The notes: generated from the letters alone by a model not told the origin. A stretch of 30,390 nucleotides of DNA from Vitrella brassicaformis CCMP3155 (GCA_001179505.1 CDMY01000689.1:1-30390), one strand, 5' to 3'; positions 1 through 24,969 are shown, counted from the stretch's first letter. Translations and numbers: made by a program.

Positions 1-2001
1 CAGGTGTGTGGGTGGGTGGGTGGCTTACAGGTGGTCGGCCGACAGGCGAGCAGGCGCACTCTGATCCATAGATCCATGGAGAGATGGATTGACATTGATT
101 GACACAGTTCATAGACACATGTCAGGTGTGTGTGTGTGTGTGTGTTGTGGTTGCGGCTGGCTTACGTCGAGTGTGTCGATTTCCTTGGCGATTTGTTTTA
201 TCTCTTTGTTGATTTGGTGTCTCTTCTCGGCGAGTTCCGCCCTGACGGCTGCCACCTCCCTCTCTGTCTCGACGGCCTCCTTGCGCAGCTTGAGCTGACC
301 CTCCAGCTTTGCACTCTCCCTGGTGCCCTCGGCCGCCGCCAACTCGCGCTGATCCACCGATCCATCCAATCAGAACACACACACACAGAGAGGGATTGGC
401 TGCAGAAGTATATGGAGTGGCGTACGTTGAGGAGTTCCTTCTGTTTGTTGACGGCCGTCTCCTGTTGGATGACGTCCGTGTCGGCCGCCACACCCACACG
501 CTCGCCAGACACACGAGCCTGGTCAGACAAACACACACACACCACACTGATCCATGTGTGTGCGCCCATCCCGTCTGTGTGTGTGTCGATTTGTGTGCCT
601 GGAGCTGTTTGAGTTGGTCGTGCATGGCCTTCTCGTCGGCGACCACCTGCACCGACTTGGCCACCAGACTGACCAGCGCCGCCTGCTGCTCGCGGATCTC
701 GTCGGCATCGATCAGCTCGCCGCTCTCCATGGCTTTGCCCAGCTCGTGGGCGCCGATCGAGGCCGACCGCAGCAGCCGACTCGACGCCAGCAGCCCCGCA
801 CTCTCCAGCTCGCTCGACGCCCGCAACAAGTCACGAGCCACCTCGTGCTGACCGACACACATGGATGTCGGTGCCTTGTGTTGTTGTGGTGCCTCCCTCC
901 CTCCCTCCCTCCCTGTCTGTCTGCCTGTCTGTCTGCCTGTCTGTCTGTCTCACTGCTCACTTGTATCTCTCCGGCCTTTCTGGGTTTGCCTTGCGCGACA
1001 AGCGAGTCGACGGCCGACTGGACGAGCGAGGCGGCCTGTCGGTGGTAGGCGGCGGCCGTGACGTGGTCGCCAAGGTGAGAGGCGTGTGTGGCCTTGATTG
1101 ACAGGGAAATGGCGTCGAGGGCGAGTGTGGGGCCGACCGCCGCCGACGAGAGCACCGGGGCGGCCTCGAGCAGACGCGCCGACATCTCACTGTACGTCGC
1201 CGCATCTGTTTGTATGTGTTTGTGTGAACACACACACACAGAGAGAGGGTGGAGGGAGGTGGCCAGTGTGTCTGTCTCTTGTGTTGTGTTGTGTGCCTGA
1301 TGTCTGTGTGTGGGCGCTGTCGGGGTCGTCGACGGCCGCGAAGCGCGAAGCCAACATGTCACACAATGACGACGCCTCTATGGATGGAAAGGAGACACAC
1401 ACACACACACACATAGAGAGAGAGAGAGATCGACAGCTCTGTGTGTGTGTCTCTATTGTGTGTGTGTGTGTGTGTGTGTGACCTTTGAAGACGGCGGCGG
1501 CGTCGGTGGCGCTTCGCTCCTTCACGTAGAGCAGGGCGGCGTGGTTCAGATGATACCTGACACACAATGCAATCACACGACAGCCATCAGACAGATGGAC
1601 AATGAGTGTCCCTCTCTCTCTGTTCATCTGTGTCATGACTGACACACCAACTTACTTGGCGTGGAGGTCTTCGTCGATGGCGGCTTGCAGGTCGCCGGCC
1701 GCGGCCATGTCGTCGGCCTGTCTGGCGAGTTGGAATGCCTTTGCCAGCGCCACCTCGGGCACATCGCCGCTGTCGTATGCGTTGGCCTTTCGCTGTGCCG
1801 CGGCGGCCTTGTTGCGGAATGTGTGCGCGGCGGGTGCGTCGGTGCCGGCGGCCTCGTACGACTGGGCGATGGCGAGGTAATCGCTGACGGCCTGCCGCTG
1901 TGTCTTGGCGGCGGCCTGTGTGAGGCCGTCCAGCGCCTCCTGCACGGCGATGGCCTCGCGCAAAGCACCCGCGTTGTCCAACGATGACACACTCGACGGA
2001 C
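1..2001. repeat. Direct segmental duplication, copy A (partner 22679-24661)
   Basis: Base 1 (caggtgtgtgggtgggtggg) aligns with 22679. Colinear through actcgacggac at 1991-2001 / 24651-24661, with scattered substitutions and microsatellite length differences. Confidence 0.95.
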
Positions 2002-3066: not shown

Positions 3067-5098
3067 ATGGCCTTCATCCTCGGCACCTGGGCGCTCGTCC
3101 TCGCCATCCTTTTCGCGTTTGGGGCGGTGTGCATCTCCTCGTACAACATCTTCATGCACCTGGTCAACTACAACCGGCCGCTGATGCAACGATACGTCGT
3201 GAGGATTCTGCTCATCGTGCCCATCTACTCAGGCAAGACAGGCAGACAAGGGCCCTCACGATAGGGGGGGCACAAAGCGGTCTGTTCACTCGTGTGTGTG
3301 TCTGTTGTCTGTCGGTGCCGCCCGCAGTGATGTCGGTCTTGTCGCTATCCTTTCCCCGAGCGCATCTGTATTTCGACACGCTGAGGGACATTTGGGAAGC
3401 GGTTGTCATATACTGCTTCTTGGTGCTCATCCTAGAGGTGAACAAGCCACACACACTCTCACGCTCCCACCCATCCACACACTCACACACAGGTATCCTG
3501 CCTGCTGCCTGGTGCCTGTCGTCTGTCTGACAGTATTGCGGCGGCGAGAGCGGGTGCGTGACGTCCATCAGTCAGTACCCCGGCTCCATCCCCCACATCT
3601 GGCCCCTCTCTATGGTACTGCAGCCAATCGCACTCACAGCCCGGTTCCTCAAGGGCTGCAAGAGGTGGACCCTCCAGTTTGTGGTCATCAAGCCGCTCAT
3701 GGCCCTCGTCAGCCTGATTCTCCACACCCAGAGGCTCTATGACGACCCGGTGTATCAGGTCTTCCTCGTTATTATCTATAACGTGTCGGTGTTTGGGGCG
3801 CTGTATGCCCTGCTGCTGTTCTATTTGGCGACGAGGAGCCACTCGGGGCTGGTGGGGAAGAACGCTATACCGAAGTTCTTGAGCGTCAAGACCATCATCT
3901 TCGCCACCTACTGGCAAGGGCTGCTGATCTCAATCTTGCCTAACATTGCTTCTGACAGGAGACAGGTCAGCCACATAGTGCATAGTGCACATGAGGCCTT
4001 TTCCCCACCCCCCTGTGTTGTCCTGTATGTGACCGACTCCGACAGATGTGGAACAGCTTCATTCTCTGCCTGGAGATGCTGTTCTTCGCCATCCTGCAGC
4101 TGCACGCCTTCCCCGCCAACGAGTTCCGCTCCCCCCCTCCCCGCGCGTCAGGATCCAGCGTCCCCAGCCCACCAGTCGTCCCCATCGGCAAGGCATCGTC
4201 AGCCGCTCTCAGAAACGTCAAGGACGCCGTCAACATGAAGGACGTCGTCAAAGACGCCTACTACAACTTTCACACCAAGTATCGGGCGCATGTGCGGCTG
4301 CAGGAAGAGCATGACAGGCACGAGGCCGACGGCGACTCGCCGCGTCGGCAGCACTCGTCGCACTCACTCTCACCAGAAGAGCCGACCACCGGTGCCGCCT
4401 TCCCGCCCATCAGCGTGAGGTCACCGAGGACGACAGAGTTCGACCTCCTCGACCTGTCAGGGAGGCCGAGCGACCCCCCCACAGCCTCCGCCTTCCCTCC
4501 CCGCCTCTCGCGCTTCGCCAGCACAGAAAGCGCTGGCAGGCCACACAACGACCTGCTCTCCGGCTCTCAGCCGCATGTCGACAACGGCCATCATCATCCC
4601 GTGTCAAATGGCGTCTATCGGCCAGCAACAGCAGCAACCAACGGCTCGCGGCACCATCACAGGAGTGGTGGTGGTGGTGCTGGTGGTCTGCCGCTGGCAG
4701 AGGACAGTCCGCCTACTGTGCGGAGTGCGGAGAGCTTCGAGGACATGGACCTCAGCGCCGTGGTCGACGTCGGCCCCCTCGAAGAGCTCAGGCCGCCATC
4801 GTCCTCAGAGCAACCACGGCGGCAATCGGATGTGCTGCCGGCTATGGGTGCCCCCGGCCCTCTGGTGAGCTCCTTCACCCAGGACCACGAAGACGGACAG
4901 CCAGCAGGACGGCAAAGAGGTGTCATCGACGCCCTGACGAGTGTCTTCTCGCGGCAACGGAGGTCGGCAGGGGAGGCGAGCAGGCGGCTGCAGATCGACA
5001 TGGTCGAGGAGGCCCCTCCCAGGCCGCCCACCCCGCCCACACACACTATGCGGCGCACTCTGTCTGCTGGGAAGGACCTCGACAGCGTGTTTGCCTGA
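3067..5098 (+). CDS. TMEM184: TMEM184/OST-alpha (Solute_trans_a) family multi-pass membrane protein with long disordered C-tail
   Basis: Exons 3067-3232, 3328-3437, 3534-3965, 4046-5098 join in frame. Family motifs QRYVVRILLIVPIYSVMS, YFDTLRDIWEAVVIYCF, CKRWTLQFVVIKPL, PKFLSVKTIIFATYWQG, FILCLEMLFFAILQLHAFP. The first intron is GC-AG. Confidence 0.92.
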
Positions 5099-9681: not shown

Positions 9682-10582
9682 TTGGGGATCAAATCGCTTT
9701 TCGTGTGTGTGTAGACACGGACAAGTGTGCGTTAGTTATGTGACATATCTCCATGCACCTACTGCCTGTCCGGCTCTCTATTGACATGCACACGTCTTAG
9801 ATATCTTTTGTGCGCAGTCAGCCGCACAAGACGACCACATTATGACGACACAGTTCACGACGGGTGCATTCACTCACTCACCCATTTGCCAAAGCGCCAC
9901 ACTCACCCACCACACTGCTAACTACACATCACGGCACCGTCAACAAACGGCCCTCTCTTCGTTCCCTATCCCGCCCGCCTGTGTTATCTGCTGCACTTTG
10001 CACACACTAACCATTATTCACTCATGACTTCGCATCATCTCCGCATGCGACTGGAAACACGCAACCACGACAAGAATTCAGGCAGGCAGACAAGCAGGCA
10101 GAGAAGTCAGGCAGCTAGGGTACAACACACATCAGATACGCACACACAGACGCGGAAGACGTGCCAGTTCGCTCCTGTTATTGATCGTCTCATGCCTGCA
10201 AAACACCACACCACCGCGGTCACAGCACCGAGGTGACAGCCACGGTGGCTGCAATCCACGCACACATGATCCATAAGTACACACATACACGGGTTCACAC
10301 ATTTCTGAAGGCCTTTGCATTGATGGGACTGGGGATCGAAGCATGTGACGGCGAAAACCTCATGCTGTGTCTCCTTCAGCCTGTGTTGATCTGCGTGCGT
10401 GTTTCGTGGACACACACAGACCGATAGAGCTATAATGTTTTCTGCCAATCTCGGCATCACGAGACAGTCACCCAGAAGGGCATGAAGTCAGTTCGTCTGC
10501 ACGTGCACGGCGGGGCGCACACTGACAGATACGAAGAGCAGAGCGGTTAACCGCTTCACTGTAATCGCGTCTCTGTCTGCTG

Positions 10583-10645
10583 TCCATGGTCGATCTTAAA
10601 AGAGCCAATCGGGATATAAAATGTAGACAGCGATTCCAAGGGAAA
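10583..10645. repeat. Dispersed ~55-65 bp non-coding element, copy 1
   Basis: tccatggtcgatcttaaaagagccaatcgggatataaaatgtagacagcgat aligns to 12824-12876 with 5 substitutions and 1 indel over about 53 nt. Confidence 0.85.
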
Positions 10646-11604
10646 CGCCTTCCTCCTTCCACACACACACACATACACACAGAGAGAGAGAGAGAGAAAG
10701 AGATGCAGACACAGATGGGGAACGGGTTTGTGGGTGCGTACGTGGGGTCCTTTGAGGACGGCTTCATTTTCCTCGACCATCTCCGTCTCTTTTTGGCCGC
10801 CCCAACCCCCCCAGACGGGCGGCGGGATCTTGATGAGCACCGCCTCCTCTGGCTGGCTGCCCGATTGACGGCAACCGCCGATACGCCAAGCCGCTGCCGT
10901 CAATCAAGTACCAGTGGTTGGCTTCTCTCCGACCTTTGCGGCGTGTCCCGCTGACGGCATCATCCGCCGAGAGATGCAGCGGCGGCTGAATGCGCAGATG
11001 CTGTTTCGGCTGTAGCTGGATCGGGACAGCCGAACAGCTGGTGTATGGCGGCGACGTCGCTGAGTCTGTTGAGGCCGAAGGGCAGTGTCCAGTCCCAAGA
11101 TGCCCGCACACACCAGAGGATGAGAGGACGTCCGTCTGTGGTCACTCTTCCGTGTTGTCTCACCGCGATCATGACGTCTGACGGTTGGTACGTGTGACAT
11201 CTCACTCCCTCTCCACCCGTCTCGAGGTGCTGATGACAGACCTGCACAACACACACACGGATTCATCATGCTGCTCTCGAGCAGACGAGTGCTGTTGGTG
11301 TGTGTCGTGCTGACCTGTTGGCTGTCTCCCCTTCGCCTCTCTGGTCTTCTGGCGGCTTTCTAGTGAGCCTCTCTCGCTCTCTTCGCCTTCTAGTGGGCAC
11401 TGCAGACAGACAGACCACAGAGGGGCGGGGGACAATCCACGCAGTCATCTCACACACTCACACTCGGGCAGACCAGCCAGCCAGCCACACGACCAGACAC
11501 ACACACGACACTCAGACCCTCTCGCACTCAGCCATATTATAGAAATGACGACAAGAAACTGACTAGAGTGCGGGCATGCACGTGTGCGGCCGGCATCGCC
11601 GCTC

Positions 11605-12823: not shown

Positions 12824-12886
12824 TCCATGGGTCGATTTGAAAAGAGCCATCCGGGATATAAAATGTAGCCAGCGATCAAGGCAAAC
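12824..12886. repeat. Dispersed ~55-65 bp non-coding element, copy 2
   Basis: tccatgggtcgatttgaaaagagccatccgggatataaaatgtagccagcgat, flanked by a 17-bp direct repeat cgcagcgctgctggctc (12740-12756 and 12886-12902). Confidence 0.85.
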
Positions 12887-13469
12887 GCAGCGCTGCTGGC
12901 TCGTTAGGTGTTGTGGCGTTCCTCCGCTCCCCTAGGCACCTCCTGTCGTGGGCGTGACGCTCACTCATTTGGCGGGGCGGGCGGGGCAGCAGCAGCAGTG
13001 GCCGCAGCCACACAGGGGGTTGACCCACGAGGGGCAGATCTTGTTCTCCTGGCCTGCGCCCGCCTCCTCCCCCTCGATGACGACCTCCCTGGCCTGCGGC
13101 GCGGGTGCCTGGCTGTTGGTTGTTGCTGGTGTGCTGGGAGGGCTCCTGGGGCGTGTGCTGAGGGGTCGTGGGGGTGGTGTCGCCGCCGCTGCTGGAGGGG
13201 TGGGCCTCGATGAAGGCGTCGATGGCGACGTTGACAGCCATGCCTCCCACCTTGAGCTCCGCCTGCAACAACGCCATCTTCTCGGCCATCTTCTGGGCCC
13301 CCTCCTCCTGCGCCCTCTCGAAGTCCCGGATCTCCTGCCGCGTCTTCTCCGCCCGCTCCTCCCGCTCCCGGAGCTCCTGCCGCGTCTTCTCAACTGCGGC
13401 CTCCTGAGCCTTCAGCTTCTCGAGCTGCTCCTGGCAAGTGGCACGACGGGCCTTGCGCTCCTTGGCCAG
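12876..13469 (-). CDS. J-domain/coiled-coil array gene, copy 1 (3' part only; 5' exons lost in the gap)
   Basis: Coiled-coil exon LAKERKARRATCQEQLEKLKAQE...LLQAELK (13469-13251) and AREVVIEGEEAG exon (from 13093) are near-identical to copies 2 and 3. The end is either read-through to 12965 (CGCGHCCCC tail) or splicing to the stop at 12876. Confidence 0.65.
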   Translation of the reverse strand: MAKERKARRATCQEQLEKLKAQEAAVEKTRQELREREERAEKTRQEIRDFERAQEEGAQKMAEKMALLQAELKVGGMAVNVAIDAFIEAHPSSSGGDTTPTTPQHTPQEPSQHTSNNQQPGTRAAGQGGRHRGGGGGRRPGEQDLPLVGQPPVWLRPLLLLPRPPRQMSERHAHDRRCLGERRNATTPNEPAALRLP

Positions 13470-13518
13470 CTGCAAGCCAGATGGACACCCAGGGAGAGAA
13501 CAGGGAGAGAAGGCACAC

Positions 13519-13818
13519 NNNNNNNNNNNNNNNNNNNNNNNNNNNNNNNNNNNNNNNNNNNNNNNNNNNNNNNNNNNNNNNNNNNNNNNNNNNNNNNNNN
13601 NNNNNNNNNNNNNNNNNNNNNNNNNNNNNNNNNNNNNNNNNNNNNNNNNNNNNNNNNNNNNNNNNNNNNNNNNNNNNNNNNNNNNNNNNNNNNNNNNNNN
13701 NNNNNNNNNNNNNNNNNNNNNNNNNNNNNNNNNNNNNNNNNNNNNNNNNNNNNNNNNNNNNNNNNNNNNNNNNNNNNNNNNNNNNNNNNNNNNNNNNNNN
13801 NNNNNNNNNNNNNNNNNN
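13519..13818. other. Assembly gap (300 N)
   Basis: Run of N; identical length to the second gap suggests a placeholder size. Confidence 1.
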
Positions 13819-13871
13819 AGAGTGAGGCTCTCGGCAAACAGGCAGCAATGGCGGCGAAAGTGCCGTGCTGA
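13819..13871 (+). CDS. Last-exon fragment of a third, inverted copy of the secreted coiled-coil gene
   Basis: Reads SEALGKQAAMAAKVPC*, identical to the C-terminus of copy B (stop 21728). 13819-13982 is the reverse complement of 21614-21780, including the 3' flank. Confidence 0.7.
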
Positions 13872-14279
13872 CTGATGGACTTATCGATGATCGACAGCAG
13901 ACAGACAGACAGACATCTCTTGACTCTGGTGGTAGTGGTGGGTTGAGAGACTGAGTGTCTGCATGTGATGTCAAGACGTACAGCTCTCACTCATTAATGA
14001 AATCTCTGATATGTTGTCCGTCCAGACGAGAGGAAAGATTGGATGGGCTGAAGTGTATTATTCACATGTGTCCCTCCCCTCCCCTCCCCTCCCCTCCCCC
14101 TGCACGAACCATCCTTCAGAGTCAGGCCACGCCGCTGCACAGTCAATCAGTTCACTCGACCCTCTCCCTCCCTCCCTCCCTCCCTCCCTCCAAATGGCAT
14201 CACCCTAGCTACTTACATGCTCCCACACCTGCACTATCATCGACCCACTCCCTCATAGTGGAACCGTATCACTATCTCT

Positions 14280-15395
14280 CTACACCGGCGCGGTCTGCTG
14301 CTCCTCCTGCCCCTCGTCGGCCTCTGTTGCCGCGGTGGTCTCGATGGTCGTCGATCTGCTGACACGGGCTCGCCCACGCGTGAGCCATTGGCGCGGCTCG
14401 GTCGTCACCGCACGCCTGACCGACACACAGCACAGCACAGCACAGCATAGTCCAGCCAGACGCCATCGATGGTTGCATCTTGTCATGTATGCGCACATCT
14501 TGAGTATCTTGCCGAAGAATGCAAAACACTGGTCTGACCTACCAGGGGCGCATCTTGCTCTCCTGGCCTCCGCCCGCCTCCTCCCCCTCGATGACGACCT
14601 CCCTGGCCTGCGGCGCGGGTGCCTGGCTGTTGGTTGTTGCTGGTGTGCTGGGAGGGCTCCTGGGGCGTGTGCTGAGGGGTCGTGGGGGTGGTGTCGCCGC
14701 CGCTGCTGGAGGGGTGGGCCTCGATGAAGGCGTCGATGGCGACGTTGACAGCCATGCCTCCCACCTTGAGCTCCGCCTGCAACAACGTCTTCTCGGCCAT
14801 CTTCTGGGCCCCCTCCTCCTGCGCCCTCTCGAACTCCCGGATCTCCTGCCGCGTCTTCTCCGCCCGCTCCTCCCGCTCCCGGAGCTCCTGCCGCGTCTTC
14901 TCAACTGCGGCCTCCTGAGCCTTCAGCTTCTCGAGCTGCTCCTGGCAAGTGGCACGACGGGCCTTGCGCTCCTTGGCCAGCTGCAAGCCAGATGGACACC
15001 CAGGGAGAGAACAGGGAGAGAAGGCACACACACAGATCTTTCACTTGCGCATGCATCCCCGCTCTCATCGCCATCTGTACCGGGTGTGGGCGTCCGAAGC
15101 ATCCCTTGGCCCCCTCCTCCCACTTGTGCACCCTCTCGAGCAGGTCGCGGGCATCCTTCAACGCTATAAACGCGCTGCCGTCACCGCCCTTATCGGGGTG
15201 TTTGTAGTCGCCGGACTGCACACACAGCCAGCACATTCAGCCAGCCACCAGCTCTCACGCCCGCCCCCAGTGCACGTGTGGACGTACCAGCGCCTTTTTC
15301 TTGTAAGCCTTCTTGGCCTCCTCCCACTCCGTGAACCACTTGACGCCCAGCGTCTCGCTGGCGGCCTGGGCGCCACTGAGGTCTCCTGGGCCTTC
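14280..15395 (-). CDS. J-domain/coiled-coil array gene, copy 2 (HPDKGG; native N-terminus replaced)
   Basis: Exons ~15395-15288 (LGVKWFTEWEEAKKAYKKKAL), 15215-15081 (SGDYKHPDKGGDGSAFIALKDARDLLER), 14980-14765 (coiled coil), 14607-14543 and 14415-14280 (TTIETTAATEADEGQEEQQTAPV*) give consistent phases. Confidence 0.75.
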
Positions 15396-15492
15396 AGCTC
15401 CTCCCGCATCTTCTGGGCCCGCTCCTCCTGCGCCCTCTCGAACTTCCGGAGCTCCTCCCGCGTCTCCGCAATCGCGGCCTCTTGGGCCGTCA
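15380..15492 (-). repeat. Diverged extra coiled-coil exon fragment fused to copy 2
   Basis: TAQEAAIAETREELRKFERAQEERAQKMREELKAQE resembles the coiled-coil exon but abuts the J exon directly. Confidence 0.75.
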
Positions 15493-15792
15493 NNNNNNNN
15501 NNNNNNNNNNNNNNNNNNNNNNNNNNNNNNNNNNNNNNNNNNNNNNNNNNNNNNNNNNNNNNNNNNNNNNNNNNNNNNNNNNNNNNNNNNNNNNNNNNNN
15601 NNNNNNNNNNNNNNNNNNNNNNNNNNNNNNNNNNNNNNNNNNNNNNNNNNNNNNNNNNNNNNNNNNNNNNNNNNNNNNNNNNNNNNNNNNNNNNNNNNNN
15701 NNNNNNNNNNNNNNNNNNNNNNNNNNNNNNNNNNNNNNNNNNNNNNNNNNNNNNNNNNNNNNNNNNNNNNNNNNNNNNNNNNNNNNNNNNNN
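15493..15792. other. Assembly gap (300 N)
   Basis: Run of N. Confidence 1.
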
Positions 15793-16747
15793 AGCCAGAC
15801 GCCATCGATGGTTGCATCTTGTCATGTATGCGCACATCTTGAGTATCTTGCCGAAGAATGCAAAACACTGGTCTGACCTACCAGGGGCGCATCTTGCTCT
15901 CCTGGCCTCCGCCCGCCTCCTCCCCCTCGATGACGACCTCCCTGGCCTGCGGCGCGGGTGCCTGGCTGTTGGTTGTTGCTGGTGTGCTGGGAGGGCTCCT
16001 GGGGAGTGTGCTGGGGGGTCGTGGGGGTGGTGTCGCCGCTGCTGGTAAGGGTGGCCTCTATGAAGGCGTCGATGGCGACGTTGACAGCCATGCCTCCCAC
16101 CTTGAGCTCCGCCTGCAACAACGCCATCTTCTCGGCCATCTTCTGGGCCCCCTCCTCCTGCGCCCTCTCGAACTCCCGGATCTCCTGCCGCGTCTTCTCC
16201 GCCCGCTCCTCCCGCTCCCGGAGCTCCTGCCGCGTCTTCTCAACTGCGGCCTCCTGAGCCTTCAGCTTCTCGAGCTGCTCCTGGCACGTGGCACGACGGG
16301 CCTTGCGCTCCTTGGCCAGCTGCAAGCCAGATGGACACCCAGGGAGAGAAGACACACACACAGATCTTTCACTTGCGCATGCATTCCCGCTCACATCGCC
16401 ATCCGTACCGGGTGTGTGCGTCCTAAGCATCCCTTGGCCCTCTCCTCCCACTTGTGCACCCTCTCGAGCAGGTCGCGGGCCTCCTTCAACGCTACGAACG
16501 CGCTGCCGTCCCCTCCCTCATCAGGGTGCTTGTAGTCGCCGGACTGCACACACAGCCAGCACATTCAGCCAGCCACCAGCTCTCACGCCCGCCCTCATTG
16601 CACATCCGGACTTACCAGCGCCTTCTTCTTGTATGCCTTCTTGGCCTCCTCCCACTCCGTGAACCAGTTGACGCCCAGCTTCTGGCTAGCGGCCTGGGCG
16701 CCACTGAGGTCTCCTGGCTCGAGCTGAGGGCTGCTGCAGTTTCCCAT
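15793..16747 (-). CDS. J-domain/coiled-coil array gene, copy 3 (MGNCSS start, HPDEGG; last exon presumably in the gap)
   Basis: Exon 1 16747-16616 = MGNCSSPQLEPGDLSGAQAASQKLGVNWFTEWEEAKKAYKKKAL|gtaagt. Exon 2 from 16543 = SGDYKHPDEGGDGSAFVALKEARDLLER. Coiled-coil exon 16319-16101; next exon 15946-15882. Confidence 0.8.
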
Positions 16748-21286: not shown

Positions 21287-21613
21287 GGTGAGGAAAGAAT
21301 CCTGAAGAAAGAGCGAGGTGATCTCCTTGAAAAACCGATTCCGTTTACAAGAATCTTGGCCGAATGATACGCGCGCTGCATCGTTTCCCTCTCAATGACT
21401 ATGGCGCATTGGTCGGCGTCACATCACACACGTACTGACCGGTCCATCTGGCTATGCAATGCGCACCTTGCCCGCCACTTAAGCTTCAAAGTTCAGCGCG
21501 CTCGCACTCAACACACCAGCAAACACAGCAGAGGGCTCCTCTGTTCACCTCCACATTGCCATTCTGCACATGCTCTGTGTGTGTGTGTGTGCGTCTTCGG
21601 TTGTCAGGGAGAG

Positions 21614-21780
21614 TGTACGTCTTGACATCACATGCAGACACTCAGTCTCTCAACCCATAACCACCACCACCAGAGTGAAGAGATGTCTGTCTGTCTGTCT
21701 GCTGTCGATCATCGATAAGTCCATCAGTCAGCACGGCACTTTCGCCGCCATTGCTGCCTGTTTGCCGAGAGCCTCACTCT
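21614..21780. repeat. Inverted repeat partner of 13819-13982
   Basis: Reverse complement matches agagtgaggctctcggcaaacagg...gtcaagacgtaca with few differences. Confidence 0.92.
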
Positions 21781-24068
21781 CACTCGAATGCTCAGCCGCC
21801 ACACCTTATCGACACACACGCACACACAGAGAGAGACATCCATACCATCTCACGTCAGTCGGTCAGTGTGGTGCAGGCTGGTTCCCTCCCTCCCTGACCC
21901 ACTTACCCTGTTGCTGCCGGATGGCGTGTTTGCCTTCGTTGATGAGGTCGGTGGTCTGCTTGTGGGCGGCCGCCTTGTCGGCGAGCTCCCCTTCCTCGGC
22001 CTCCTCTGCACTGCCCTCCTCGGCAATCAACTCGTCCGCCAACGACCCACCTCACACACACACAAACAGACATCGACACATACACACATATTATATACCA
22101 GCGGTGTGGCCTAACATATGTCTGTCTGTCTGTCTGTCTGTGTGATGGGATTGTGATACCTTCCTGTGCGGCCCGTTCGGCTTTGATGGCGAGTTTGGCG
22201 AGTCGCTTCTTGTGGGCAATGTCCCGCTCGACGGTCGCCCTTCGCTTGTCGTGAGCCGCACTCTCCAACGACGCCACACTCACAGCCAAACCTGTAGACA
22301 CACACAGCACAGACATCCCTCTCCCTCTCTGTCTCTCTGCCTGCGTCTCTGGCTGACTGACCGTCGACTCGGCTGGCCATCTTGTCGACGTCACCCTCGA
22401 GCGCTGCGATCTGCGTGTCGAGAGATGCGGGCGGGCCGACTTGCTGGGGCGGCGCGAGGCCTCGGGAGGGATCAGCTGGGTGAAGCGGTGAGTGGGGGCC
22501 GACTGGGGGGCGGCTGGGTGTGTGTTGGCGTGAGTCACCAACAGGTCCTCCTCGGCTATCACGTTGCCAATGCGAGTGTCGAGCTCGCGAAGACGCCCAC
22601 GCAGCTCACCCACACGAGACACACTGACCGACAGGACATCATCACACCACACACACGAGTGCATGTTAGGGCTCATGTCAGGTGTGTGGGTGGGTGGGTG
22701 GCTTACAGGTGGTCGGCCGACAGGCGAGCAGGCGCACTCTGATCCATAGATCCATGGAGAGAGGAAGGGATTGACATTGATTTACACTCATAGACACACA
22801 TCAGGGGTGTGTGTGTGTGTGTGTGGGCTTACGTTGAGTGCGTCGATTTCCTTGGCGATTTGTTTCATCTCTTTGTTGATTTGGTGTCTCTTCTCGGCGA
22901 GTTCCGCCCTGACGGCTGCCACCTCCCTCTCTGTCTCGACGGCCTCCTTGCGCAGCTTGAGCTGACCCTCCAGCTTTGCACTCTCCCTGGTGCCCTCGGC
23001 CGCCGCCAACTCGCGCTGATCAATCGACGTATCCAATCACTGCACACACACACACACACACACACAGAGGGATTGGCTGCAGAAGTATATGGAGTGGCGT
23101 ACGTTGAGGAGTTCCTTTTGTTTGTTGACGGCCGTCTCCTGTTGGATCACGTCTGTGTCGGCCGCCACACCCACACGCTCGCCAGACACACGAGCCTGAT
23201 CAGACAAACACACACACACCACTGATTCATGAGTGTGTGCCCATCCCGTCTGTGTGTGTGTCGATGTGTGTGCCTGCAGCTGTTTGAGTTGGTCGTGCAT
23301 GGCCTTCTCGTCGGCGACCACCTGCACCGACTTGGCCACCAGACTGACCAGCGCCGCCTGCTGCTCGCGGATCTCGTCGGCACCGAACAGCTCGCCGCTC
23401 TCCATGGCTTTGCCCAGCTCGTGGGCGCTGATCGAGGCCGACCGCAGCAGCCGACTCGACGCCAGCAGACCCGCACTCTCCATCTCACTCGACGCCCGCA
23501 ACAAGTCACGAGCCACCTCGTGCTGACCGACACACATGGATGTCGGTGCCTTGTGTCGTGTTGTGGTGCCTCCCTCCCTCCCTCCCTCCCTCCCTGTCTG
23601 TCTGTCTGTCTGCCTGTCTGTCTCACTGCTCACTTGTATCTCTCCGGCCTTTCTGGGTTTGCCTTGCGCGACGAGCGAGTCGACGGCCGACTGGACGAGC
23701 GAGGCGGCCTGTCGGTGGTAGGCGGCGGCCGTGACGTGGTCGCCAAGGTGAGAGGCGTGTGTGGCCTTGATGGACAGGGAAATGGCGTCGAGGGCGAGTG
23801 TGGGGCCGACCGCCGCCGACGAGAGCACCGGGGCGGCCTCGAGCAGACGCGCCGACATCTCACTGTACGTCGCCGCATCTGTTTGTATGTGTTTGTGTGA
23901 ACACACACACACAGAGAGAGGGTGGAGGGAGGTGGCCAGTGTGTCTGTCTCTTGTGTTGTGTTGTGTGCCTGATGTCTGTGTGTGGGCGCTGTCGGGGTC
24001 GTCGACGGCCGCGAAGCGCGACGCCAACACGTCACACAATGACGACGCCTCTGTGGATGGAAAGGAGA

Positions 24069-24104
<36 letters not shown>

Positions 24105-24969
24105 TATCGACAGCTCTGCGTGTGTGTGTGTGTGTATGTGTGTGTGTGTGACCTTTGAAGACGGCGGCGGCGTCGGTGGCGCTTCGCTCCTTCACGTAGA
24201 GCAGGGCGGCGTGGTTCAGATGATACCTGACACACAATGACACGACAGCCATCCAGGCACATGGACAATGACTGTCCCTCTCTCTCTCTGTTCATCTGTG
24301 TCATGACACACAGACTTGGCGTGGAGGTCTTCGTCGATGGCGGCTTGCAGGTCGCCGGCCGCGGCCATGTCGTCGGCCTGTCTGGCCAGCTGGAATGCCC
24401 TTGCCAGCGCCACCTCGGGCACATCGCCGCTGTCGTATGCGTTGGCCTTTCGCTGTGCCGCGGCGGCCTTGTTGCGGAATGTGTGCGCGGCGGGTGCGTC
24501 GGTGCCGGCGGCCTCGTACGACTGGGCGATGGCGAGGTAATCGCTGACGGCCTGCCGCTGTGTCTTGGCGGCGGCCTGTGTGAGGCCGTCCAGCGCCTCC
24601 TGCACGGCGATGGCCTCGCGCAAAGCACCCGCGTTGTCCAACGATGACACACTCGACGGACACAGAGATCTCGAGGTGGTGGCCGATGGGCGTCCCTCTT
24701 CCTCCAAACGAGCTGCCGCCTCACGCAGACGGACAAGACGATCAGACTCAGCACCAGACACCGACGGCACCGGCGAAGAAGCAACTGACAGACAGAGACA
24801 CAGAGGCACAAGCAAGCATCATCATGAACATGTCTCTCTCTTCGATGTGCGTCTGCTTGCCTTGCTTCTGCTGCTGTGGCTCAGTGTTCGAGCGGAGTGC
24901 AGCTCCCTCACACCAAAGCGGAGACAGGATGAGAGCGAGGCAAAGCAGACAGAGACGCGTCACCATCAT
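21728..24969 (-). CDS. Secreted alpha-helical/coiled-coil protein, copy B (full length, about 13 exons)
   Basis: Exon 1 24969-24861 = MMVTRLCLLCLALILSPLWCEGAALRS... (signal peptide) with GC donor, joining 24784 in phase 1. Later exons include LDTQIAALEGDVDKMASRVD, DKRRATVERDIAHKKRLAKLAIKAERAAQE and ADELIAEEGSAEEAEEGELADK; the last exon ends AAMAAKVPC*. Confidence 0.8.
22679..24661. repeat. Direct segmental duplication, copy B (partner 1-2001)
   Basis: Colinear with 1-2001, including introns. Confidence 0.95.

What the first reader, a model, noticed from the sequence alone, without database searches (positions are those of the whole stretch)
12876..16747. Tandem array of membrane-anchored J-domain + coiled-coil genes
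Invisible in the ORF track because the J domain is split by an intron. Spliced, it reads LGV.WFTEWEEAKKAYKKKAL|SGDYKHPD(K/E)GGDGSAF(I/V)ALK(D/E)ARDLLER, i.e. helices I-III with the Hsp70-activating HPD. Copy 3 starts MGNCSS, the MGxxxS myristoylation consensus with a palmitoylatable Cys. A ~70-aa coiled coil and copy-specific tails follow. At least three full or partial copies plus a fourth fragment sit within 4 kb. Inference: a rapidly diversifying family of dually acylated Hsp70 co-chaperones, reminiscent of J-protein expansions in apicomplexans but with an architecture I do not recognise.
Basis: partly seen in the sequence, partly recalled or inferred. Interest (0 to 1): 0.75.

Follow-up and report, generated by a model that had tools for sequence, protein, structure and literature searches.

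The report
Divergent J-domain gene array in Vitrella
This stretch of the alga Vitrella brassicaformis holds several near-identical, intron-split genes for a divergent J-domain (Hsp70 helper) protein with a charged helix and changeable tails; it is a species-specific offshoot of an ordinary chaperone family, and the claimed lipid anchor is not a conserved feature.

Summary
The sequence features are real. On the minus strand sit copy A (16747 to the gap at 15792), copy B (15392 to about 14270), copy C (13518 to about 12968) and a coiled-coil fragment (15492-15393). The genome is Vitrella brassicaformis CCMP3155.

The intron-split domain is a true but divergent J domain:
- Each exon alone picks J domains as its best match, at adjacent profile positions.
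- Public spliced models and transcript ORFs of paralogues have DnaJ as top Pfam hit. One domain scores 16.6 bits (below cut-off); a two-domain model scores 28.3 (cut-off 27.8).
- The intron lies where canonical Vitrella J genes have one.

Dual acylation is not conserved: two of four N-termini, and the expressed transcript, start MANCS. Only the J exons show constraint (dN/dS 0.13-0.53); helix and tails evolve neutrally. Several copies carry frameshifts or a dead splice donor.

Neither gap is continuous or in frame. Contig C482 shows that the "fourth fragment" is the end of a further copy (F), fused to B in public model CEM16725.1.

UniRef already names the C252 paralogue "J domain-containing protein". 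This is a new member of a known kind, of modest interest.

The parts
16616..16747 (-). Copy A exon 1: MGNCSS N-terminus plus J-domain helices I-II, ending ...KKAYKKKAL
   Evidence: Translation. Its 5-copy profile hits the DNAJA1 J domain as best PDB match. It aligns to columns 4-26 of a Vitrella J-domain profile.
16544..16615 (-). Copy A intron 1 (72 nt, GT..AG, phase 0), splitting the J domain after profile position 26
   Evidence: Sequence. The same junction is used in the public model P0001 and the transcript ORF P0007. The position and phase match canonical J genes C333 and C408.
16409..16543 (-). Copy A exon 2: SGDY insertion, HPD loop (HPDE in A, HPDK elsewhere) and helix III
   Evidence: Translation. 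The profile hits Tim14 as best PDB match and profile columns 28-53. Library-wide hits are J-domain proteins.
16320..16408 (-). Copy A intron 2 (89 nt)
   Evidence: Removed in transcript ORFs P0002 and P0007, which read ...GRTHP|LAKERK.
15882..16319 (-). Copy A exon 3. It holds a 73-aa charged helix (16319-16101), then AIDAF and a Thr/Pro/Gln-rich segment. The structure downstream of 16101 is unresolved, and the 3' end is lost in the gap.
   Evidence: 114 of 114 residues are identical to transcript ORF P0007 up to ...QHTS.
15493..15792 (.). Assembly gap. It is not continuous, more than 300 nt is missing, and no reading frame crosses it.
   Evidence: Flank alignments. C482 overlap.
15393..15492 (-). 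The 'fourth fragment': the 3' end of the truncated coiled coil of a further copy (F). The rest of F lies on contig C482:473-977.
   Evidence: C482:1-472 is 100% identical to window 15021-15492. The public model P0001 reads through it in another frame.
15288..15392 (-). Copy B exon 1, without its own ATG (GPGDLSGAQAASETLGVKWFTEWEEAKKAYKKKAL)
15081..15215 (-). Copy B exon 2 (SGDYKHPDKGGDGSAFIALKDARDLLER...)
   Evidence: 45 of 45 residues are identical to residues 175-219 of P0001.
14543..14980 (-). Copy B exon 3 (charged helix, AIDAF, Thr/Pro-rich segment). A possible last exon lies around 14415-14270; this is unverified.
13519..13818 (.). Assembly gap. The 5' half of copy C (at least about 390 nt) is missing or absent.
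12968..13518 (-). Copy C: the end of intron 2, exon 3 from 13469, and a Cys-rich tail ...CPSWVNPLCGCGHCCCCPARPAK* (13093-12968). The tail is in frame only if a 157-nt GT..AG intron (13250-13094) is removed.

Best explanation
The region is part of a small family of class C (type III) J-domain protein genes, found so far only in Vitrella. There are 5-6 J units on three scaffolds.

Each unit encodes these parts in order:
- a short M(G/A)NCS N-terminus;
- a divergent three-helix J domain split by a phase-0 intron, with an invariant HPD, a basic helix II, three extra residues before HPD, and no helix IV;
- a charged helix of about 73 aa with internal 14-aa repeats;
- a variable tail.

The family descends from ordinary Vitrella J genes of the 'HPDKGGD..AF' type that carry the same intron. 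It has spread by tandem and block duplication, with unequal crossing-over and gene conversion.

Inferred working: the J domain docks on an Hsp70 and triggers ATP hydrolysis through HPD. The helix and tail decide where or on what this happens. Several units (B, E, F, and the tails of A to C) look damaged or fused, so only some are likely to make a working protein.
For: Identity of the genome:
- Its size and scaffold number match Vitrella brassicaformis CCMP3155 exactly.

J-domain homology, tested exon by exon:
- The exon 1 profile has the DNAJA1 J domain as top PDB hit (E 0.15). The exon 2 profile has Tim14 as top hit (E 0.031).
- hhalign against 10 canonical Vitrella J domains places exon 1 on columns 4-26 (P 3.8e-5) and exon 2 on columns 28-53 (P 6.2e-5).
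- The exon 2 profile searched against 1.84 billion proteins returned six hits. Two are Vitrella's own proteins, two are bacterial J-domain proteins (E 8e-5 and 1e-4), and two are repeat-protein hits (E 5e-17 and 6e-6) that I take as spurious.
- Exon 2 compared with canonical Vitrella J genes gives z of 7-10.6, with 0 of 200 shuffles reaching the score.
- The intron position and phase are shared with those genes.

Whole products, taken from public records:
- P0001 scores 28.3 bits for DnaJ (E 2e-6; cut-off 27.8).
- P0007 scores 16.6 bits and P0009 16.7 bits (E about 0.008). DnaJ is the top family in each.
- The AlphaFold model built with an alignment has pLDDT 77-92 in both J units. Nearly all listed Foldseek PDB hits, including the top six, are J domains or J-domain proteins.

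Constraint and expression:
- HPD is invariant in all copies.
- dN/dS of the J exons is 0.13-0.53 in all 10 pairs.
- An MMETSP transcript ORF (P0002) and the spliced ORF P0007 have intron 2 removed (P0007 also intron 1). P0007 is 114/114 identical to copy A exon 3.

Copy number:
- Only six J units were found genome-wide.
Against: - The single-domain product is below Pfam's cut-off (16.6 vs 27.8 bits).
- Single exons give no Pfam DnaJ hit. The genome-wide exon scan with PF00226 did not list these loci.
- The fold match depends on an alignment that contained canonical J domains. The single-sequence control was of low confidence (pLDDT 54) and its J-domain hits were weak.
- There is a 3-residue insertion just before HPD, and helix IV is absent.
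- Many units are defective. B has no ATG. F has a 5-nt deletion in exon 2. E has a GT>TT donor and a 1-nt deletion. The Cys-rich tail is out of frame in A to C.
- The helix and tails show dN/dS of about 1.
- The transcript contigs are mosaics of D-like and A-like sequence, so they may be assembly chimeras.
- No Hsp70 interaction has been tested.
Confidence: 0.72

Rival explanations
1. The copies in this window are mostly decaying duplicates or pseudogenes, in part artefacts of short-read assembly. At most one family member, such as D on C252, would make a functional protein.
For: - B lacks a start codon and abuts a coiled-coil fragment in another frame.
- F has a 5-nt deletion.
- E has a GT>TT donor and a 1-nt deletion.
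- A 4-nt indel puts the Cys-rich tail out of frame in A to C, and A and B carry TAG in that frame.
- dN/dS is about 1 in the helix and tails.
- No public gene model was found for the window copies in the 121-768 aa range.
- There are two N gaps, and a contig end (C482) overlaps the scaffold.
Against: - The J exons have dN/dS of 0.13-0.53 and HPD is invariant in 6 of 6 units.
- A-specific exon 2 and exon 3 sequence is present, spliced, in transcript-derived ORFs.
- Copy A has an intact start, both J exons and intact splice sites.
Confidence: 0.3
2. It is a J-like domain that keeps the fold but no longer activates Hsp70, in the manner of Tim16/Pam16-type or pseudo-J proteins. It would serve instead as a helical interaction module.
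For: - The Pfam score for a single domain is below the cut-off.
- There is a 3-residue insertion between helix II and HPD, and helix IV with its RxxYD motif is missing.
- Copy A reads HPDE instead of the usual HPDK.
Against: - HPD itself, the basic helix II and the helix III Phe are all kept.
- Tim14, a working J domain, also lacks helix IV and is the best PDB match for exon 2.
- Proteins that carry DnaJ Pfam matches show the same spacing between Tyr and HPD. These are P0008 (KGDY) and the C244 family.
Confidence: 0.2
3. It is a dually acylated (N-myristoyl plus S-palmitoyl), membrane-anchored co-chaperone family.
For: - Copies A and F start MGNCS(S/N), with Cys4 and Ser/Asn6.
- Copies C and E also carry a Cys-rich C-terminal string that could be palmitoylated.
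Against: - D, E, the expressed ORF P0007 and the model P0009 start MANCS, with no Gly2.
- Pro at position 7 fails the PROSITE-type pattern, which I recalled from memory.
- The Cys string is out of frame in the present assembly unless an unverified intron is assumed.
Confidence: 0.15
4. The resemblance to a J domain is due to chance.
For: No single exon reaches significance in Pfam.
Against: - Two independent halves hit adjacent parts of the J profile.
- The library-wide hits are J proteins at E of about 1e-4.
- Shuffle z-scores reach 10.6.
- DnaJ is the top Pfam family for three public products.
- The intron position is shared with canonical J genes.
Confidence: 0.03

Closest known systems
Canonical Vitrella J-domain genes of the 'HPDKGGD..EAF' type (G000:C333:102049-102404 and C408:209-587)
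   Same: - A phase-0 intron lies directly after '...AL' of helix II.
- Exon 2 begins just before HPDKGGD..AF.
- Exon 2 similarity gives z of 7.7-10.6.
   Different: - The window family has three extra residues (SGD) at the start of exon 2.
- It lacks helix IV (RxxYD).
- It carries the charged helix and its own tails.
Class C (type III) J-domain proteins, e.g. DNAJC8-like 'J domain plus charged helix' layouts (recalled from memory)
   Same: - The J domain is the only recognisable domain.
- There is no G/F region, zinc finger or DnaJ C-terminal domain in Pfam.
- A long Glu/Arg/Lys-rich helix follows the J domain.
   Different: - No sequence relative outside Vitrella was found beyond the J domain itself.
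- The J domain sits at the extreme N-terminus.
Tim14/Pam18 (mitochondrial import motor J protein, PDB 2guz)
   Same: - It is the best PDB sequence match for exon 2 (E 0.031).
- It is the second-best structural match (rmsd 1.7 A over 59 columns).
- It is also a three-helix J domain without helix IV.
   Different: - The window family has no transmembrane segment or mitochondrial targeting features.
- Its helix II is longer.
- Similarity is confined to HPD and helix III.
Cysteine-string protein DNAJC5 (recalled from memory)
   Same: It combines a J domain with a C-terminal run of cysteines. Copy E reads CGCGHCCCCCC and copy C reads CGCGHCCCC, both possible palmitoylation sites.
   Different: - The string is shorter.
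- It is out of frame with the upstream exon in the current assembly.
- It is absent or interrupted in A, B and D.
- No homology outside the J domain was shown.
Public records for paralogues: CEM16725.1 (P0001, on C482) and the 568-aa C252 model that UniRef names 'J domain-containing protein' (P0009)
   Same: - They belong to the same family.
- P0001 residues 175-219 are identical to copy B exon 2.
- They use the same exon junctions.
   Different: - They are fused or partial models (F+B and D+E).
- No separate model for window copies A, B or C was found.

Membership tests
J domain (Pfam PF00226 DnaJ) | His-Pro-Asp tripeptide in the loop between helices II and III | tested here: met
   HPD is invariant in all six units (A, B, D, E, F and the C482 copy of B) and aligns with the HPD of canonical J domains.
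J domain (Pfam PF00226 DnaJ) | Whole-product score at or above the Pfam gathering cut-off (27.8 bits) | tested here: inconclusive
   - The one-domain public products score 16.6 bits (P0007) and 16.7 bits (P0009). DnaJ is the top family, at E of about 0.008.
- The two-domain model P0001 scores 28.3 bits (E 2e-6).
J domain (Pfam PF00226 DnaJ) | Collinear profile similarity across helices I to III | tested here: met
   - Exon 1 aligns to columns 4-26 and exon 2 to columns 28-53 of a Vitrella J profile (P 3.8e-5 and 6.2e-5).
- The best PDB sequence hits are J domains for both exons.
- Library-wide hits are J proteins at E of about 1e-4.
J domain (Pfam PF00226 DnaJ) | Helical hairpin fold (helices II and III antiparallel, with HPD at the tip) | tested here: inconclusive
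   - The model built with an alignment has pLDDT 77-92. Nearly all listed Foldseek PDB hits, including the top six, are J domains or J-domain proteins (rmsd 1.7-1.9 A for the best two; E only about 0.25).
- The alignment contained canonical J domains, so it may bias the model.
- The single-sequence control had pLDDT 54 and gave only weak J hits.
J domain (Pfam PF00226 DnaJ) | Helix IV with the (K/R)xxYD motif | tested here: not met
   It is absent. After helix III the sequence reads ...ERVHKWEEGAKGC.GRPHP. Tim14 also lacks helix IV, so the family does not strictly require it.
J domain (Pfam PF00226 DnaJ) | HPD-dependent stimulation of Hsp70 ATPase | not testable with these tools
   This needs a biochemical assay.
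Class A/B (type I/II) DnaJ | G/F region, CXXCXGXG zinc finger and DnaJ C-terminal domain | tested here: not met
   Pfam finds no such matches in P0001, P0007 or P0009. The family is therefore class C.
Dually acylated (N-myristoyl plus palmitoyl) proteins | Gly at position 2, conserved across the family | tested here: not met
   Gly2 is present in A and F only. D, E, P0007 and P0009 have Ala2.
Dually acylated (N-myristoyl plus palmitoyl) proteins | Permissive residues at positions 3-7 (PROSITE-type pattern recalled from memory: G-{EDRKHPFYW}-x(2)-[STAGCN]-{P}) | tested here: not met
   MGNCSSP and MGNCSNP pass up to position 6 but have Pro at the last position.
Dually acylated (N-myristoyl plus palmitoyl) proteins | Cys next to the myristoylated Gly | tested here: met
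   Cys4 is present in all four complete N-termini.
Dually acylated (N-myristoyl plus palmitoyl) proteins | Actual lipid attachment and membrane location | not testable with these tools
   This needs labelling and localisation experiments.
Cysteine-string protein (DNAJC5-like) | A cysteine string in frame downstream of the J domain | tested here: inconclusive
   - Cys-rich ends occur in copies C and E only.
- In C the string is in frame only if an unverified 157-nt intron is removed.
- In E it follows a 1-nt deletion.
- A and B carry a stop codon in that frame.

The most novel reading that the evidence does not exclude
The ancestral gene encoded a lipid-anchored co-chaperone: a J domain, a charged spacer helix and a C-terminal cysteine string, in some copies with an added N-terminal MGxC acylation site. 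That would be an independent chromerid invention of the cysteine-string-protein layout known from animals. It would now be turning over by birth and death, with tail swapping between tandem copies.
Probability: 0.12. Interest if true: 0.5.

Novelty: new member of a known kind. Interest (0 to 1): 0.25.

Why it matters
J-domain proteins decide where and on what Hsp70 works. Lineage-specific expansions of them are a theme in the apicomplexan relatives of this alga. This family shows how such expansions can start: an ordinary J gene acquires a spacer helix and new tails, then multiplies by tandem duplication, unequal crossing-over and gene conversion.

On present evidence it is a small offshoot, found so far only in Vitrella, with uncertain function. 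Its value is mainly for annotation. Copies A to C appear to lack public gene models, and two public models are fusions of neighbouring copies. It also flags a misassembly-prone locus.

Tried and rejected
- Pfam on single exons gave no DnaJ hit even at E<=10.
- The genome-wide PF00226 exon scan listed 150 of 151 matches (one was not listed) but none at C689, C252 or C482. The halves are too short and divergent for that route.
- A word search with the exon 3 ORF found nothing.
Whole-product tests used only public proteins that the searches returned (P0001, P0002, P0007, P0009).
I therefore could not fetch the 2,111-nt contig behind P0007 to confirm that it is cDNA.
- The single-sequence AlphaFold control was too weak to be independent fold evidence.
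- Two hits of the big search are repeat-protein artefacts: P0003, an adhesin-like repeat protein, and P0004, a coiled-coil repeat protein.
- I rejected the reading that the coiled-coil fragment at 15492-15393 is in frame with copy B's J exon. It is one base out of frame. The public model instead reads the fragment in a Gly/Ala/Arg-rich alternative frame.
- Pfam on ten long ORFs elsewhere in the window gave no useful context.
- Earlier scan notes held nothing on this family.
- The literature search found no paper on Vitrella J proteins.


Full report
**Source and nature of the DNA**

The window is the whole of scaffold C689 of a 72,700,666-bp assembly in 1,064 scaffolds. These are exactly the figures published for Vitrella brassicaformis CCMP3155, a photosynthetic relative of apicomplexans assembled from short reads with mate-pair scaffolding (PMC4501334). 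The region is eukaryotic, about 60% G+C, with short GT..AG introns.

**Checking the observation**

On the minus strand, copy A reads as follows:
- Exon 1, 16747-16616: MGNCSS...KKAYKKKAL.
- Intron 1, 16615-16544.
- Exon 2, 16543-16409: SGDYKHPDEGGDGSAFVALKEARDLLER...
- Intron 2, 16408-16320.
- Exon 3 from 16319, opening with a 73-aa helix-prone segment that is 49% charged.

Copy B repeats this at 15392-15288 (no ATG), 15215-15081 and from 14980. Copy C begins inside intron 2 at 13518. A coiled-coil fragment occupies 15492-15393.

**The gaps**

Neither gap is continuous or in frame.

- Gap 15493-15792. The upstream flank corresponds to the 3' part of a unit. The downstream flank lies in the middle of a coiled coil.
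- Contig C482 starts with 472 nt that are 100% identical to window 15021-15492. It then runs on into another complete 5' half-gene, copy F (MGNCSN, J exons, truncated coiled coil, C482:473-977), and from there into unrelated DNA.
- The 'fourth fragment' is therefore the end of copy F. Together with the missing 3' end of copy A, well over 1 kb must be absent where 300 N are written.
- Gap 13519-13818. Copy C lacks at least about 390 nt of 5' gene.
- A-B adjacency rests on scaffolding only. F-B adjacency rests on contiguous sequence.
- A second array lies on C252: D at about 53003 and E at about 51516.
- Only six J units exist in the genome.

**Is it a J domain?**

I tested them separately.

- Single exons give no Pfam DnaJ hit. 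A genome-wide exon scan with PF00226 did not list these loci.
- A five-copy profile of exon 1 has the DNAJA1 J domain as its best PDB sequence match (E 0.15), aligned to LGV...KKAYRKLAL.
- The exon 2 profile has Tim14 as best match (E 0.031), aligned over HPDKGG..F....EA.D.LE.
- Against a profile of ten canonical Vitrella J domains, exon 1 maps to columns 4-26 and exon 2 to columns 28-53. The pairwise P values are 3.8e-5 and 6.2e-5.
- The exon 2 profile was searched against 1.84 billion proteins and returned six hits. Two are Vitrella's own proteins. Two are bacterial J-domain proteins with HPD(K/R)GGDxxAF (E 8e-5 and 1e-4). The other two (E 5e-17 and 6e-6) are repeat-protein hits that I take as spurious.
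- Exon 2 is strongly similar to exon 2 of canonical Vitrella J genes of the HPDKGGD..EAF type (z 7-10.6; 0 of 200 shuffles reach the score).
- Two of those genes (C333, C408) have a phase-0 intron at exactly the same place, right after '...AL'.

**Whole products from public records**

The big search returned public whole products, which I scored as they stand.

- CEM16725.1 (P0001) is the annotators' partial model at the C482 end. It scores 28.3 bits for DnaJ (E 2e-6; cut-off 27.8), summed over two domains.
- P0007 is a 439-aa ORF from a 2,111-nt JGI/IMG contig. Both introns are removed, so I take the contig to be cDNA. It scores 16.6 bits (E 0.0087), with DnaJ as top family but below the cut-off.
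- P0009 is the 568-aa C252 model that UniRef calls 'J domain-containing protein'. It scores 16.7 bits.
- An AlphaFold model of P0001, built with an alignment, has pLDDT 77-92 in both J units. Nearly all listed Foldseek PDB hits, including the top six, are J domains or J-domain proteins: Sis1, Tim14, DNAJA1 and the polyomavirus T-antigen J domain. The best two align at rmsd 1.7-1.9 A over 54-59 columns, though E is only about 0.25.
- The alignment contained canonical J domains. The single-sequence control was weak (pLDDT 54). The fold evidence is therefore supportive, not independent.

Taken together, homology to J domains is secure, and the domain is divergent. Compared with canonical J domains:
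- It has three extra residues (SGD) at the start of exon 2, just before HPD.
- It lacks helix IV.
- HPD, the basic helix II and the helix III Phe are kept in every copy.
- The same longer spacing between Tyr and HPD occurs in a DnaJ-bearing protein from an unknown eukaryote (P0008...CLKGDYRHPDKGGD). It also occurs in another Vitrella tandem J family on C244.

**Expression and constraint**

- P0002 is an MMETSP transcript ORF. P0007 is its longer cluster mate.
- Both have intron 2 removed. P0007 also has intron 1 removed. P0002 starts inside intron 1, so that intron is retained or the transcript is truncated.
- P0007 is 114/114 identical to copy A's exon 3 up to ...QHTS, and it shares A-specific residues in exon 2. 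Its exon 1 and its tail are D-like.
- A-type sequence is therefore transcribed and spliced, although the contig may be an assembly mosaic.
- Counts summed per exon give dN/dS of 0.13-0.53 for the J exons in all ten pairs. The pairs are not independent.
- The charged helix, the AIDAF/Thr-Pro-rich segment and the tails show pN about equal to pS in every frame.

**Damage and turnover**

- B has no ATG and abuts F's coiled-coil fragment one base out of frame.
- F has a 5-nt deletion at the end of exon 2. This is why the public model reads the coiled-coil DNA in a Gly/Ala/Arg-rich frame to reach B's J domain.
- E has a GT>TT donor and a 1-nt deletion. The public model skips its exon 1 and fuses it to D.
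- The helix contains 42-nt (14-aa) internal repeats and differs in length between copies.
- Intron 1 groups A with D and B with E and F. Exon 3 groups A, B and C against D and E. This mosaic points to block duplication plus gene conversion.

**Tails**

- Copies C and E end in a Cys-rich string (CPSWVNPLCGCGHCCCCPARPAK* and CPWWVNPLCGCGHCCCCCCPARPAK*). It occurs nowhere else in the genome.
- In E the string is in frame with the AIDAF segment.
- In A, B and C a 4-nt difference puts it out of frame. A and B also carry TAG in that frame.
- A candidate GT..AG intron of 154-157 nt, placed after ...AELK, would restore the frame in C.
- However, the transcript ORFs retain that segment.
- The 3' gene structure is unresolved.

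**Acylation**

- A and F start MGNCS(S/N). D, E, the expressed ORF P0007 and the model P0009 start MANCS.
- Gly2 is obligatory for N-myristoylation (established knowledge).
- Both Gly2 copies have Pro at position 7, which the PROSITE-type pattern (recalled from memory) excludes.
- There is no transmembrane segment.
- 'Membrane-anchored, dually acylated' is thus at best a property of some copies.

**Mechanism**

Shown: a divergent J domain with an intact HPD, under moderate constraint, transcribed and spliced.

Inferred: it binds an Hsp70 and triggers ATP hydrolysis, as class C J proteins do. The charged helix would act as a spacer or dimerisation element; its heptads have only one consistently hydrophobic position, so a coiled coil and a single alpha-helix are both possible. 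The tail would set location or client.

Rival readings, with my confidence in each (they are not mutually exclusive):
- Most window copies are decaying duplicates (0.3).
- The domain is J-like but inactive (0.2).
- Chance resemblance (0.03).

**Comparison and verdict**

This is a class C J-domain family, found so far only in Vitrella and derived from the alga's own HPDKGGD-type J genes. No relatives outside Vitrella were found beyond the J domain itself. A paralogue is already labelled 'J domain-containing protein' in UniRef. Copies A to C seem to lack public models.

It is a new member of a known kind. Its interest is modest, mainly for annotation and for showing how J-protein expansions begin. 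The cysteine-string idea is the only reading that would raise the interest, and it needs RNA evidence.

Noticed in passing
window 1-2001 and 22679-24661: A 2-kb direct duplication at 94% identity within the same scaffold.
   Followed up: no
window 13819-13991 and 21606-21780: A 173-nt inverted match at 96% identity that directly abuts the gap at 13519-13818. It could be a dispersed repeat or a sign of a scaffolding problem.
   Followed up: no
window 10314-10757; L007:5927-6368 (C252:49926-50367): A 445-nt element at 92% identity lies downstream of both J arrays. This suggests that the two loci arose by block duplication.
   Followed up: partly
L019 (C244:55664-57506) and L020 (C244:36370-36748): Another tandem J-domain gene family (…AYRKVCRQ|HPYLHPDKK…) with a 1,449-bp spacing. 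It also has 10 rather than 7 residues between the helix II Tyr and HPD.
   Followed up: partly
G000 genome-wide: There are at least 151 exon-level PF00226 matches. Many J genes are split by an intron near profile positions 25-28, so half-domain exons are the rule in this genome and ORF-based scans will miss them.
   Followed up: partly
Alignment A1, introns 1 and 2 of copies A, B, D, E, F: The introns are less diverged (0.035-0.137) than synonymous sites of the flanking J exons (0.09-0.30). This fits gene conversion or a constraint on the introns.
   Followed up: no
P0009 (C252) and P0001 (C482): Both public gene models fuse two neighbouring family copies into one protein (D+E and F+B). P0009 skips E's exon 1, whose donor is TT.
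   Followed up: yes
P0008 (Logan contig, unknown eukaryote): A DNAJA-like protein fragment reading KKAYKKACLKGDYRHPDKGGD. It has the same 3-residue insertion before HPD as the Vitrella family.
   Followed up: no
window 4046-5098 (+): An ORF with a weak Pfam hit to the end of the organic solute transporter Ost-alpha family (E 0.0013, below the cut-off).
   Followed up: no
I did not examine it.
   Followed up: no
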